This document shows, in pieces, positions 37,836-46,169 of a DNA stretch of 64,000 nt. Position 1 is the first letter of the stretch. Each line of letters begins with the position of its first letter. A program made the translations under genes and the position numbers. Origin of the DNA: Mobula hypostoma (Eukaryota); NCBI RefSeq assembly GCF_963921235.1, contig NC_086112.1, positions 14,384,001-14,448,000 on the forward strand. The letters run 5' to 3'. The notes beneath the pieces were generated by a model. The model was not told the origin of the DNA and did not search any database. It saw only the letters and a program-made list of their open reading frames with translations.

Positions 37836-38054
<219 letters not shown>

Positions 38055-38914: not shown

Positions 38915-39094
<180 letters not shown>

Positions 39095-40044: not shown

Positions 40045-42200
40045 TAGAAACATAGAAAGCCTACAGCACAATACAGGCTCTTTGGCCCACAAAGCTGTGC
40101 CGAACATATCCTGACCTTAAAAATTACCTAGTATTACCCATAGCCCTCTATTTTCCTGAGCTCCATATACCTGTCTAGGAGTCTCTTAAAAGACCCTATC
40201 ACATCCGCCTCCACCACCGTCACCCCATTCCACGCACTCACCACTCTCTGCGTAAAAAAACTTACCGCTGATATCTCCTCTGTACCTACTTCCAAGCACC
40301 TTAAAACTGTGCCCTCTACTGTTAGCCATTTCAGCCCTGGGAAAAAGCCTCTGACTATCCACACGATCAATGCTCTCACCATCGTATACACCTCTATAAG
40401 GTCACTTCTCATCCTCTGTCGCTCCAAGGAAAAAAGGTCGAGTTCACTCAAACTATACTCATAAGGCATGCTCCCCAATCCAGGCAACATCCTTGTAAAT
40501 CTCCTCTGCACCCTTTCTATGGTTTCCACATCCTTCCTATAGTGAAGTGACCTGAACTGAGCACAGTACTCCAAGTGGGGTCTGACCAGGGTCCTATATA
40601 GCTGCAACATTACCTCTCGGCTCCTAAACTCACTTCCATGAAGGCCAATGCACCATATGCCTTCTTAACCAGAGAGTCAACCTGTGCAGCACCTTTGAGT
40701 GTCCTATGGACTCGGACCCCAAGATCCCTCTGATCCTCCACACTGCCAAGAATCTTACCATTAATACTATATTCTGTCATCATATTTGACCTATCAAAAT
40801 TAACCACTTCACACTTATCTGGGTTGAACTCCATCTGCCATTTCTCAGCCCAGTTTTGAATGCTATCAATGTCCCGCTATAACCTCTGACAGCCCTCCAC
40901 ACTATCCACAACACCTCCAACCTTTGTGTCATCAGCAAATTTACTAACCCATCCCTCCACTTCCTCATCCAGGTCATTTGTACAAATCACGAAGAGTAGG
41001 GGTCCCAGAATAGATCCCTGAGGCACACCACAGGTGACCGACCTCCATGCAGAATATGACCCATCTACAATCACTCTTTGCCTTCTGTGGGCAAGCCAGT
41101 TCTGGATCCACAAAGCAATGTCCCCTTGGATCCCATGTTCCTTACTTTCTCAATGTCTTGCATTGGGTAGCTTGTCAACTGCCTTGCTGAAATCCATATA
41201 CACTACATCTACTGCTCTACCGTCATCAATGTGTCTAGTCACATCCTCAAAAAATTCAATCAGGCTCGTAAGGCACGACCTGCTTTTCACAAAGCCATGC
41301 TGACTATTCCTATTCATATTATGCCTCTCCAAATGTTCATAAATCCTGCCTCTCAGGATCTTCTCCATCAACTTACCAACCACTGAAGTAAGACTCACCG
41401 GTCTATAATTTCCTGGGGTATCTCTACTCCCTTTCTTGAATAAAGGAACAACATCCACAACACTCCAATCCTCCGGAACCTCTCCCATCCCCACTGATGA
41501 TGCAAAGATCATCGCTGGAGGATCAGCAATCTCTTCCCTCACCTCCCACAGTAGCCTGGGGTACATCTCGACCAGTCCCGGTGACTTATCCAACTTGATG
41601 CTTTCCAAAAGCTCCTGCATATCCTCTTTCTTAATATCTACATGCTCAAGCTTTTCAGTCCGCTGTAAATCATCCCTATAATCGCCAAGATCCTTTTCTG
41701 TAGTGAATACTGAAGCAAAGTACTCATCAAGTACGTCTGCTATCTCCTCCGGTTCCATACACACTTTTCCACTGTCACACTTGATTGGTCCTATTCGCTC
41801 ACGTCCTCTCCTCTTGCTCTTCACATACTTGCAGAATGCCTTGGGGTTTTCCTTAATCCTGTCCGCCAAGGCCTTCTCATGGCCCCTTCTGGCTCTCCTA
41901 ATTTCTTTCTTGAGCTCCTTCCTGCTAGTCTTATAATCTTCTAGCTCTCGATCATTACCTTGCGTTTTGAACCTTTCATAAGCTCTTCTTTTCTTCTTGA
42001 CTAGATTTACAACAGCCTTTGTACACCGTGGTTCCTGTACCCTACCATCCTTTCCCTGTCTCATTGGAATGTACCTATGCAGAACCCCACACAAATATCC
42101 CCTGAACATTTGCCGCATTTCTTCCGTACTTTTCCCTGAGAAAAGTACGGAATATCTGTTTCCAATTTATGCTTCCAAGTTCCTGCCTGATAGCCTCAAG
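40045..42200 (-). mobile_element. CR1 LINE, 5'-truncated ORF2, in AK6 intron 3
   Basis: ORFs 41150-42118, 40877-41113, 40610-40834 and 40134-40610 with NYRPVSLTS, MDFSKA, GVPQGSILGP and KFADD. Confidence 0.95.
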
Positions 42201-42309: not shown

Positions 42310-42368
42310 CCCGTCTTCATCCAGAATGGGACACGAATATTCTTCATCATAGCCTTCATACAGCTGAC
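42310..42368 (-). CDS. AK6: AK6 exon 3 (59 nt)
   Basis: gcaaag|(G)QLYEGYDEEYSCPILDEDG|gtgagt; human QLYDGYDEEYDCPILDEDR. Confidence 0.95.
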
Positions 42369-42489
42369 CTTTGCAGATATATTACAAACATACTGGTTTA
42401 TAGCTGTCTCCTGACTAGCAACATCCATTAGAACAGAAAAGTACAGATACATTCACAAATATTAAACCCACATTGATACATAAAATATA

Positions 42490-43216
42490 CAGTGGATTCC
42501 AGTTAATATGGACACATCAGGACCAGTATATTTTGCCAAAGTTTTATACTTAAAAAGGTATAAAAATGACAAGCTGAGTAACAAATTTAATATTTAAATG
42601 AAATACAGAATAAATTAGAACATTACCAATACTACTACAGTACTGGAAAACTGTATTAGTTCCTAATAGTTACTGACGGAGGAATTATTCACTGTACAAA
42701 AACATATTCCTTCGATTGACTGTAAATGAGCAAAACCAGCACAGACACTGAGTGGAGATAATGGACTGCCTTCACACAGTGTTCTTGACGATTGCCTCAG
42801 AAGGCAGTGGAGGCCAATTCTCTGGATGCTTTCAAGAAAGAGTCAGATAGAGCTCTTAAAGGTAGCGGAGTCAAGGGATATGGGGACAAGGCAGGAACTG
42901 GATACTGATTGTGGATGATCAGCCATGATCACAGTGAATGGTGGTGCTGGCTCGACGGGCGAATGGCCTACTCCTGCACCTGTTGCCTATTGTCTATCCT
43001 CCATTTAATTGTAACATTAAAGATGATTGCCGATATTTTCAAATTCTTCTTAGTTCCTAACTTGTTGAATAGTGAAATTGTTTCAATTTCACTCCTGACC
43101 ATTTCTGGCATCTCCAAGCCTGAATGCTTGAAACTGCTGTGAGCAAAACGGTTGTGAATTTTTTAGGAGTTGTCCCAAAGAAGTAGTTCGCCCAATTAAT
43201 TAACCAGAATCCACTG
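42490..43216. mobile_element. Tigger/pogo-like element with nested CR1 3' tail (about 42797-42996)
   Basis: TIRs CAGTGGATTCCAGTTAAT...TTAACCAGAATCCACTG; the nested piece closely matches 23988-24190. Confidence 0.75.
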
Positions 43217-43846: not shown

Positions 43847-44056
<210 letters not shown>

Positions 44057-45389
44057 TTACAGCATCCCTGTGGGAATGCTCCCCACCTACCTCCCAGAGT
44101 GTAGTGTCACAACGCACAACATCAATGCTTTCTCCCTCCCACGAGGATTTACAGTTCCACACGATTGTATCATTCTTTTCATGGTGGTTCAAAATCACAG
44201 ACTTTATGATAGGTTCCAGTATCTTCCCCCACTATCTCATTGAGCTGACAGGTTTTTAATTTCCAGTTTCTTTTGTGTGTGTGTCTCTCTCTCCTTTGTG
44301 GTTACATTTGGGACCCTTCAATCTACAGGAACCATTGCAGCATTTTTTAAAAACTTTGGCAGATAAAAAGCAAATAATTTACCATCTCTGAAGTCACCAG
44401 TATCAAATGTCATTAGATCCTTGAAATTAATCAATTTTCAAGTTTGCTAACCTCCGTTACAATGTTTTTAAAATTAATGCTGGCTTTATTTTACTTCCCC
44501 ATTTCCTTCAGCCTTCACTACTTCTGGGAGTTTTGTTTTTGTATTTTCCCTGTATAATGCAATGTAACCTGCATGCACCACTTGCACTGGCAGCTCATTC
44601 CACTCTCACAACCCTCTGAGTGAAGAAGTTTCCGCTTGTGTTCCCCTTAAACGTTTCACCTTTCACCCTTAACCCGTTACGTCTCGTTGTAGTCCCACCC
44701 AACCTCAGTGGAAAAACCTCATTTACCCTGTCTATAACCTTCATAATTTTTTTTAAACCTCCTTCAAATCTCCTCAATCTTCTGCGTTCTAAGAAATAAA
44801 ATCCTGACCTATTCAATAATGCAACAGAACAACACACACAAATGCTGGAGGGATTCAGCAGATCAGGCAGCAAATATGGAGGGGAATAAACAGTTAACGT
44901 TTTGGACTGAGACCCTTCATCATGGATGGGATGGAAGGGGGAAGAAGCCAGAAGCCAATGTAACAGAAAGAGCTTTCTGAAGTTATAACTAGTAGAGCAG
45001 AGAAAACATTGCATGTAGCTTCTCTCAGTTGTCAGATGTTGTAGCACCCTTAGAAACTTTAACAATACTAGACAAAAGTAGCATAAAAAGTAAATCCCCA
45101 CTGGGAATATATGCTGCCCCCCCACTCATATGCATTTGCCACCACTCCTCAATCCACTGACTCCTCCAGCATCTTCAGCAACAAGCAGATTTTTGTGTCT
45201 CCACCAGCATCTTGATTTTTGCCCCTAAAAAAACTCACCTCATGCACAAGCAACAGTTAAAGTAAAATAGCTTGCCCTCCTTTACCCTACCCAGACAACC
45301 CATCTTACACTCTCCCGGCTGTCCCCACACAAACAGCTCAACCACCACTCCCTACCCCTACCACAATCTCACCCCAATCCAACCCCTCC

Positions 45390-45875
45390 CCACACATCTT
45401 TCAGAAAGATATTTGGCGGTCTCTCTATGGTTACTCACGATTCCTCTCCCTCCTTCCCCGATACATCCTACTCCCGCACAATGAGGACATTTGGCCATCT
45501 CTATGTGATAAGACACCACACACATACACGCCTCATACATATAAACTCCTGACCCCACCCTCCACCTGAGAGAAGGATATTCGGCCGTCTCTCCATGGTG
45601 ACAGACACCATACACATAAACCCCTGACCCCCATACTCAGACCCACACCCCTCACCTGTGAGGAGGATATTCGGCCGTCTCTCCATGGTGACTAACACCA
45701 CACACATAAACCCCCGACCCCCATACTCAGACCCACACCCCTCACCTGTGAGGAGATAAGATCGTCTCTCTATGGTGACAGACACCACACACATAAACCC
45801 CCGACCCCCATACACAGACCCACACCCCTCACCTGTGAGCAGGATATTCGGCCGTTTCTCCATGGTGACAGACAC
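45390..45875 (-). repeat. Tandem ~90-bp repeat whose unit contains AK6 exon 1 plus its splice donor (4 good and 2 degenerate copies)
   Basis: Start-codon positions at 45863 (ATG), 45773 (ATA), 45686 (ATG), 45596 (ATG), 45504 (ATA) and 45428 (ATA); donors after 45833, 45746, 45656 and 45566. Confidence 0.93.
45833..45863 (-). CDS. AK6: AK6 (adenylate kinase 6 / hCINAP) exon 1, promoter-proximal copy
   Basis: accATG GAG AAA CGG CCG AAT ATC CTG CTC ACA G|gtgagg = MEKRPNILLT(G), compare human MLLPNILLTG; phase 1. Confidence 0.9.
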
Positions 45876-46169
45876 GAGCTCCTACCCGTGGGGTCTTTCG
45901 CTCGACTTGAGCCATCTCCCTTTGCGTCACGGCTCGTCCTGCTCACTGCCGAAATGATCAGAAACATTTCACGCACAAACAGACCACTCCCAATGATTCA
46001 AAGTTGATTCTGTAGGAAACAGTGGCTCTCCCGGTACCGTCGCTGCATCAAGGAACACAACGGGCAAAATTCTGGACAACTAAAATACGATTGAGAGCTG
46101 AGAGTGGAGAAAGGGAGGACCCCTTGGTGAGCTGGTGTTTGTTAAAAAATCGGAGTGAGAAGTGAATTG
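45864..46169. promoter_or_regulatory. Bidirectional AK6/RAD17 promoter and probable non-coding RAD17 exon 1 (donor after 46169)
   Basis: CpG-enriched segment directly upstream of the AK6 ATG; CRE-like tgcgtcac near 45923; plus-strand donor GAATTG|gtgagt. Head-to-head arrangement as in mammals. Confidence 0.65.

What the first reader, a model, noticed from the sequence alone, without database searches (positions are those of the whole stretch)
45390..45875. AK6 exon 1 (ATG, codons 1-10 and splice donor) is tandemly amplified in frame
Seen: a ~90-bp unit containing the AK6 start, the first beta-strand before the P-loop (MxxRPNILLTG) and the GT donor recurs about six times, with the most distant copies most decayed. 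Copies at 45863, 45686 and 45596 keep accATGG and a donor (gtgag, gtgag, gtgga). The copy at 45773 keeps gtgag but has ATA. The spacings 90/87/90 are all multiples of 3, and the frame is stop-free to 45501. Inference: choosing donor 2, 3 or 4 would splice in phase 1 to exon 2 and give AK6 with +29, +59 or +89 aa repeat N-terminal extensions and an intact P-loop. Initiation at an internal ATG could still give near-normal AK6. This would be a possibly variable tandem repeat made of a functional exon, acting as an array of competing donors and starts.
Basis: partly seen in the sequence, partly recalled or inferred. Interest (0 to 1): 0.8.

Follow-up and report, generated by a model that had tools for sequence, protein, structure and literature searches.

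The report
AK6 exon-1 boundary minisatellite, extra donors silent
In a devil-ray genome, the first coding exon of the housekeeping gene AK6 and its splice donor have been copied head to tail into a 90-base minisatellite, but the one RNA data set available shows only the first copy spliced, as in a known class of boundary-spanning minisatellites.

Summary
On the minus strand, a 90-bp unit is repeated 3.7 times at 88% match, followed by two decayed copies. The unit holds 12 nt of 5' leader, the AK6 ATG, 31 nt of coding sequence, the donor, and about 47 nt of G-rich intron.

The functional reading is not supported.
- One RNA contig from the same species joins exon 3, exon 2 and exon 1 through the canonical donor at 45833. 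That run has no RNA contig on copies 2-4.
- In a close relative, one unit is about 15 times deeper than its flanks and carries a 2-nt insertion. Its inferred period is 89, which is not a multiple of 3, so the frame is not conserved.
- In copy 2 the exon-like part has decayed faster than the intron part.
- No database protein carries the read-through peptide.

This fits a known class of minisatellites whose first unit spans an exon-intron boundary (human F7 IVS7, LMNB2, PDGF, CBS, IFI6). In those, the most upstream donor is used.

New here: the unit contains the whole coding part of exon 1, including its start codon, and the AK6 intron-1 start is a recurrent repeat hotspot in rays.

The scan found a similar donor-repeating minisatellite in this genome's SMIM19.

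The parts
45864..45911 (-). 5' UTR of AK6, as far as the RNA contig reaches
   Evidence: The exon-1 piece of the X1 RNA contig lies on 45831-45911. An upstream ATG at 45915 lies just outside it.
45833..45863 (-). AK6 exon 1 coding part (MEKRPNILLT + first base of G); this authentic donor is the one used
   Evidence: Sequence. The RNA joint 44023>45831 (cut +2) has GT..AG ends on the minus strand. The spliced 172-aa product is 171/172 identical to Mobula birostris AK6.
45786..45875 (-). repeat unit c1 (12 nt leader + exon 1 coding part + 47 nt of intron)
45699..45785 (-). repeat unit c2, 87 nt: ATA instead of ATG at 45773, 3-nt deletion, donor CAG|GTGAGG at 45746
   Evidence: Compared with c1, the exon part differs at 10 of 31 positions and the intron part at 1 of 47.
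45609..45698 (-). repeat unit c3: ACCATGG at 45686, encodes MERRPNILLTG, donor CAG|GTGAGG at 45656
   Evidence: It matches the exon-1 state seen in related species B and C at the two sites where they differ from c1.
45519..45608 (-). repeat unit c4: ACCATGG at 45596, weaker donor CAG|GTGGAG at 45566, rearranged intron part
   Evidence: Its intron start resembles the authentic sawfish intron start.
45443..45518 (-). decayed unit c5 (ATA at 45504, donor lost); supplies the in-frame TAG at 45503
45353..45442 (-). decayed unit c6 (ATA at 45428, donor lost)
   Evidence: Possibly orthologous to the decayed copy in sawfish at L001:2801-2831; this is an inference.
44026..45832 (-). AK6 intron 1; contains units c2-c6 and a high-copy transposon fragment at about 44528-44929
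   Evidence: RNA joint skipping 1807 nt; depth table
43933..44025 (-). AK6 exon 2 (P-loop GTPGVGKT)
   Evidence: Sequence; RNA contig piece on 43931-44023
42310..42368 (-). AK6 exon 3
   Evidence: RNA joint 42366>43931
38937..39082 (-). AK6 exon 4
   Evidence: E 6e-24 to human AK6 structures 1RKB and 3IIJ.
37836..38025 (-). AK6 exon 5 coding part with TAA stop

Best explanation
This is a minisatellite whose first unit spans the AK6 exon-1/intron-1 boundary. A segment running from 12 nt before the ATG to about 47 nt into the intron was duplicated head to tail. The likely mechanism is slippage or unequal exchange at the GT-rich ends of the unit, in a G-rich stretch just downstream of the promoter with G-quadruplex motifs. 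An old round left two decayed copies (c5, c6). Later rounds gave c4, then the nearly identical c1-c3. The array keeps changing between related devil-ray species.

The spliceosome uses the most upstream, cap-proximal donor at 45833. Copies 2-6, with their ATGs and identical donors, are removed as part of intron 1, and normal 172-aa AK6 is made. The extra donors are silent 5' pseudo-sites. The open frame and the spacings in multiples of 3 are inherited from the unit plus some luck, not maintained by selection.

Shown: the anatomy, the canonical junction in RNA contigs, and the differences between species.
Inferred: the duplication mechanism, the neutrality, and the reason the first donor wins.
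For: - Array and anatomy.
- RNA: the X1 contig (624 nt, depth 152) joins exon 3, exon 2 and exon 1 with GT..AG at 45833/44025. X1 depth is 0 across 45466-45733, and its depth in bin 45734-45867 is fully explained by exon 1 alone.
- Relative B: a 119-nt contig on 45711-45827 has depth 84.6 against 5.7 in the flanks, with a 2-nt insertion, giving 87+2 = 89 nt. That matches 89+30 for a k=31 cycle. B also has 2-nt and 12-nt indels elsewhere in the array.
- c2 exon part 10/31 changed against intron part 1/47, and its ATG is lost.
- No protein matches the read-through ORF.
- The annotated AK6 of Mobula birostris, Hemitrygon, Pristis and the skates is listed as a single 172-aa product, with no isoform label.
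- G-quadruplex motifs occur in units c1-c3, with strong G-skew on the RNA-like strand.
- Precedent: PMC1557585 lists F7 IVS7, LMNB2 and PDGF as using only the authentic donor, and shows experimentally that in F7 the most upstream of identical donors is chosen.
- Sawfish AK6 intron 1 starts with about 30 donor-like 25-nt units after its authentic donor, yet the annotated product uses the first donor.
Against: - RNA evidence is one run of unknown tissue, seen only as assembled contigs. Contigs drop rare isoforms, and 192 joints were not listed.
- Three identical strong donors in phase 1 with an open frame would escape nonsense-mediated decay, so a minor isoform could exist.
- IFI6 and CBS, members of the same class, do use the next one or two pseudo-sites.
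- All three spacings being multiples of 3 is somewhat unlikely by chance (roughly 1 in 27, assessed after the fact).
It was not read from a long molecule.
Confidence: 0.8

Rival explanations
1. The array works. Donors 2-4 and the internal ATGs are used at a low level or in particular tissues, giving AK6 with +29, +59 or +89 aa repeat extensions.
For: Donors at 45746 and 45656 are identical to the authentic one. All are in phase 1 and the frame is open for 120 codons. IFI6 and CBS use proximal pseudo-sites. Mammalian AK6 models with extended exon 1 exist (P0240, P0259).
Against: - X1 has no RNA contig on copies 2-4, although the main isoform has depth 152.
- The frame is not kept in relative B.
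- The c2 exon part has decayed and its ATG is lost.
- No protein matches the repeat peptide.
- Ray AK6 annotations list a single product.
Confidence: 0.12
2. The repeat is kept because it regulates AK6. Extra U1-binding 5' splice sites and G-runs close to the promoter would boost transcription or splicing of the first intron, with copy number tuning expression.
For: The array begins at the start codon, at least 49 nt into the transcript. It is G-rich with G-runs after each donor. G-rich, donor-like minisatellites occupy the same place in sawfish. From general knowledge, promoter-proximal 5' splice sites and intronic G-triplets can enhance expression.
Against: No expression comparison is available. 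Skates have a C-rich repeat at this place and a bamboo shark has none. Copy number and unit differ freely between species, as expected for neutral turnover.
Confidence: 0.06
3. It is an assembly artefact: a single exon 1 wrongly expanded.
For: Short-read contigs break inside copies 2-3.
Against: The copies differ in sequence, and a DNA run holds 0.91 of the sampled words. Every bin of the laid stretch has depth, and exact contigs cover 45193-45655 and 45784-46149. Two other species carry parts of the array.
Confidence: 0.02

Closest known systems
Human F7 intron 7 37-bp VNTR (Borensztajn et al. 2006, PMC1557585)
   Same: The first monomer spans the exon-intron boundary, so the authentic donor is followed by identical 5' pseudo-sites. 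Only the most upstream one is used. Copy number varies.
   Different: The F7 unit holds only the last 4 bp of an internal exon. Here the unit holds the whole coding part of the first exon, with Kozak ATG. The period is 90 rather than 37, and the extra copies would be in frame. Use of the pseudo-sites after loss of donor 1 was tested in F7 but not here.
Human LMNB2 (100-bp unit, 10-15 copies) and PDGF intron 4 (81-bp unit, 16-18 copies) boundary minisatellites, as listed in PMC1557585
   Same: Long units of about 80-100 bp that reiterate the donor. Only the authentic donor is used.
   Different: I read these only as cited in PMC1557585. Neither is described there as containing a start codon.
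Human IFI6 (6-16) intron 2 and CBS intron 13 minisatellites, as listed in PMC1557585
   Same: Donor-reiterating minisatellites.
   Different: In those genes use of the pseudo-sites is seen in transcripts. Here the RNA contigs show none.
SMIM19 63-bp donor-repeating minisatellite in this same genome (scan note s1-141808)
   Same: Same genome and same kind: an exon end plus donor copied many times.
   Different: It involves an internal exon 2 end, with 13 copies. I did not re-examine it.
Tandem exon duplication giving alternative or mutually exclusive exons (general knowledge: Kondrashov & Koonin 2001; Letunic et al. 2002)
   Same: An exon duplicated in tandem within its gene.
   Different: Those duplicates carry both splice sites and are alternatively included. 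These copies have no acceptor and no promoter, and are not seen in RNA.

Membership tests
Boundary-spanning minisatellite with 5' pseudo-sites (F7 IVS7 class) | Head-to-tail array of at least 3 similar units | tested here: met
   Period 90, 3.7 copies, 88% match, score 517, plus two decayed copies.
Boundary-spanning minisatellite with 5' pseudo-sites (F7 IVS7 class) | The first unit contains the exon-intron junction, so the donor is reiterated in the intron | tested here: met
   CAG|GTGAGG at 45833, 45746 and 45656; CAG|GTGGAG at 45566. The junction at 45833 is confirmed by RNA.
Boundary-spanning minisatellite with 5' pseudo-sites (F7 IVS7 class) | The most upstream donor is the one used in mRNA | tested here: met
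   A single RNA contig joins 45833 to 44025, and no RNA contig lies on c2-c4. This is contig-level evidence from one run.
Boundary-spanning minisatellite with 5' pseudo-sites (F7 IVS7 class) | Copy number varies (VNTR) | tested here: inconclusive
   Between species: in relative B the unit is about 15 times deeper than its flanks (84.6 vs 5.7), and B has indels of 2 and 12 nt. Variation within the species was not tested.
Boundary-spanning minisatellite with 5' pseudo-sites (F7 IVS7 class) | Pseudo-sites are functional when the upstream site is inactivated | not testable with these tools
   Needs minigene mutagenesis.
Alternative first exons or tandem duplicated alternative exons | Each copy is included in some transcripts (own promoter or alternative splicing) | tested here: not met
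   X1 RNA depth is 0 over 45466-45733. The units carry only 12 nt of upstream sequence.
AK6 / CINAP adenylate kinase isoenzyme 6 | Sequence homology over the full length, with P-loop GTPGVGKT | tested here: met
   Exon 4 peptide matches human AK6 structures at E 6e-24. The spliced 172-aa product is 171/172 identical to Mobula birostris AK6.

The most novel reading that the evidence does not exclude
The extra exon-1 copies may not be inert. In some tissue or stage, donor 2 or 3 (or an internal ATG) could be used to make N-terminally extended AK6. Alternatively, the number of promoter-proximal donor and G-run units could tune AK6 expression, with copy number differing between devil-ray species (about 4 here, about 15 in a relative). 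Either way, this would be a natural system of competing identical donors and starts that includes a start codon.
Probability: 0.12. Interest if true: 0.55.

Novelty: new member of a known kind. Interest (0 to 1): 0.3.

Why it matters
This is a clean natural example of the rule that the first of several identical donors wins. It extends that rule to a first exon, where the repeat also multiplies the start codon, and to a cartilaginous fish. It could serve as a comparative model for 5' splice-site choice and for minisatellite birth at G-rich starts of first introns.

It also matters for gene annotation. Gene predictors could mistake the 120-codon open frame, or the downstream ATG-plus-donor copies, for real isoforms. 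It does not change what AK6 is or does.

Tried and rejected
- TAF9 sharing the 5' exon, as in human: no TAF9 histone-fold motif on either strand of the window. In mammals Taf9 is a retrocopy hosted by Ak6 (PMC4772013), so this idea was dropped.
- First run search, on 2.2 kb: it found only small shares that came largely from transposon fragments. The second, narrower search found usable runs.
- Protein search with the exon-5 peptide: it returned mostly fragmentary or mispredicted AK6 models. It served only to reach full-length ray proteins.
- Search for proteins carrying the read-through repeat peptide: none among candidates of 66-210 aa. The +59 and +89 aa isoforms lie outside that length range, so this is weak negative evidence.
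The array could therefore be compared with relatives only through the short-read contigs.
- Assembly artefact: rejected.
- Dispersed repeat family: the donor-spanning 23-mer occurs only in the array within the window.

Full report
**The observation**

Tandem Repeats Finder reports an array at 45551-45875 with period 90, 3.7 copies, 88% matches and score 517. On the minus strand each unit reads, in order:
- 12 nt of leader ending in CACC;
- ATGG and 31 nt encoding M-E-K/R-R-P-N-I-L-L-T-G;
- the donor CAG|GTGAGG;
- about 47 nt of G-rich intron ending in a TG-rich tract.

The units are c1 45875-45786, c2 45785-45699 (87 nt), c3 45698-45609 and c4 45608-45519. Two clearly homologous but decayed copies follow: c5 at about 45518-45443 and c6 at about 45442-45353.

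ATGs in ACCATGG context lie at 45863, 45686 and 45596, and c2 has ATA at 45773. Donors with identical 9-mers end at 45833, 45746 and 45656, and a weaker CAG|GTGGAG ends at 45566. All are in phase 1. A 23-nt donor-spanning word occurs three times, against 0 expected. The frame from ATG 45863 is open for 120 codons to the TAG at 45503, and the other two frames contain stops.

**The gene**

Exon 2 (44025-43933) encodes the P-loop. Exon 3 is 42368-42310, exon 4 is 39082-38937 and exon 5 is 38025-37836. The exon 4 peptide hits human AK6/CINAP structures at E 6e-24.

The spliced 172-aa product is 171/172 identical to the annotated AK6 of the giant manta Mobula birostris, differing only at K3 versus R3. 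The window therefore comes from a close relative. An earlier scan note names the genome as the lesser devil ray.

No TAF9 motif is found in the window. That is expected, because mammalian Taf9 is a retrocopy hosted in Ak6 (PMC4772013). In the manta and stingray records, Rad17 lies head to head upstream of AK6.

**Is the array real DNA?**

A DNA run of the same species (X8) holds 0.91 of the sampled words of 45480-46000. When laid on the window it gives exact contigs on 45193-45655 and 45784-46149, and every bin has depth. Contigs break only inside the near-identical copies 2-3, as expected for k=31. Two related species also carry parts of the array. An assembly artefact is rejected.

**What RNA shows**

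The contigs of run X1 total 241 Mb and lie on exons but not on the unique parts of the introns. I read it as RNA of the same species.
- One 624-nt contig of depth 152 joins exon 3 to exon 2 (42366>43931) and exon 2 to exon 1 (44023>45831).
- With the stated 2-nt shift, the second joint gives an intron 45832-44026 with GT..AG ends on the minus strand.
- This is the canonical junction, 45833 to 44025.
- The exon-1 piece of the contig ends at 45911.
- X1 depth is 0 in the bins covering 45466-45733.
- The 42.1 in bin 45734-45867 equals 37/134 of 152, which is exon 1 alone.

So copies 2-4 are not in the assembled transcripts. The limits are one run, unknown tissue, contigs only, and joints that were not all listed. 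A minor isoform cannot be excluded.

**What relatives show**

Species B is about 98% identical in the flanks.
- A 119-nt contig on 45711-45827 has depth 84.6 against 5.7 for the flanks, suggesting about 15 copies of one unit type.
- In that unit the c2 ATA reads ATG, and 2 nt are inserted in the TG tract at the unit border.
- The unit would then be 87+2 = 89 nt. This equals contig length minus 30, as expected for a k=31 cycle. A period of 89 is not a multiple of 3. This is an inference, not a long-read observation.
- B also has a 2-nt insertion between c3 and c4 and a 12-nt insertion in c4.

Species B and C both read CTC and AGA where c1 has CTG and AAA. The ancestral exon 1 therefore encoded MERRPNILLTG, exactly as c3 still does. 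Species C shares the decayed c5/c6 region almost unchanged, so the array predates these species (all).

**Signs of selection, or their absence**

Compared with c1, c2 has 10 of 31 changes in the exon-like part, including loss of the ATG and a 3-nt deletion, but only 1 of 47 in the intron part. That is the opposite of purifying selection on a coding copy.

The 90-nt length of c4 results from offsetting indels in its intron part. An open frame across units follows automatically once one unit is open and the period is a multiple of 3. The sequence is also A-poor, which makes stop codons rare.

A search of 5.8 billion proteins with the 120-aa read-through ORF found nothing. This covers only candidates of 66-210 aa. 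The AK6 entries of Mobula birostris, Hemitrygon, Pristis and two skates carry no isoform label.

**Wider context in rays**

Loci were fetched for five other species.
- Sawfish (Pristis pectinata): the authentic donor is followed at once by about 30 copies of a 25-nt G-rich unit that itself looks like a donor (AAG|GTGAGA). There are 31 sites scoring at least 7, in all three phases. A decayed partial copy of exon 1 plus donor follows 790 nt downstream, 84% identical with GT changed to AT. By its position before a conserved intron block, this copy may be orthologous to c6 (inference).
- Numbfish (Narcine): a decayed copy of the 5' UTR, exon 1 and donor lies 1.84 kb upstream.
- Two skates and a bamboo shark: no exon-1 copy. 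The skates have a C-rich minisatellite at the start of the intron.

The start of AK6 intron 1 is thus a recurrent repeat hotspot in batoids. The strand is strongly G-skewed, and c1-c3 each carry a G-quadruplex motif. From general knowledge, that is typical of unstable minisatellites.

**Comparison with what is known**

PMC1557585 describes exactly this kind of object: minisatellites whose first monomer spans an exon-intron boundary.
- In human F7 IVS7, LMNB2 and PDGF, only the authentic donor is used.
- In IFI6 and CBS, the next one or two pseudo-sites are also used.
- In F7, mutagenesis showed that the pseudo-sites are functional but that the most upstream site always wins.

The AK6 array meets the testable defining features: a tandem array, a boundary-spanning first unit, and use of the upstream donor in RNA. 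The feature I did not find described is that the unit includes the whole coding part of a first exon, with its Kozak ATG. The same genome has a comparable donor-repeating minisatellite in SMIM19 (scan note s1-141808; not re-examined).

**Verdict**

It is a new member of a known kind. The most likely state (about 0.8) is a neutrally evolving boundary-spanning minisatellite whose extra starts and donors are removed with intron 1. Residual probability goes to low-level alternative donor use (about 0.12) and to a regulatory role for the promoter-proximal donor and G-run copies (about 0.06). Interest is modest.

Noticed in passing
L001:2045-2763 (Pristis pectinata AK6 intron 1): A 25-nt G-rich minisatellite of about 30 units, each resembling a strong donor (AAG|GTGAGA), starts 14 nt after the authentic and weaker donor CAG|GTGGGT. 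A decayed copy of the exon-1 end plus donor sits at 2801-2831.
   Followed up: partly
L005:100-215 (Narcine bancroftii, 1.84 kb upstream of AK6 exon 1): A decayed duplicate of the AK6 5' UTR, ATG, first codons and donor region. It could be an old first exon or the product of a larger tandem duplication.
   Followed up: no
window 41153-42166 (minus strand, AK6 intron 3): A 338-aa stop-free segment that looks like a LINE-type reverse transcriptase fragment. This rests on its residues only, with no domain search.
   Followed up: no
window 42384-43187 and 44528-44929: Very high-copy repeats in AK6 introns 2 and 1. Summed contig depth reaches 5.8e5 in DNA runs and is also high in the RNA run. They are shared by all three species laid and are presumably SINE/LINE fragments.
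   Followed up: no
window 45915 (minus strand): An upstream ATG (GGGAGATGG), out of frame with AK6, lies 4 nt beyond the 5' end of the RNA contig. If transcribed, it would open an upstream ORF overlapping the AK6 start.
   Followed up: no
window 45840 and 45856: The functional exon 1 of this species carries two derived changes relative to two related species and to its own copy c3: CTC>CTG (silent) and AGA>AAA (R3K). The intronic copy c3 therefore preserves the ancestral exon sequence better than the exon itself.
   Followed up: partly
upstream of AK6 (window beyond about 46100, plus strand): In the Mobula birostris and Hemitrygon records, a Rad17 gene lies head to head within 3 kb of AK6, as in human. 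The window's own RAD17 exons were not located.
   Followed up: no
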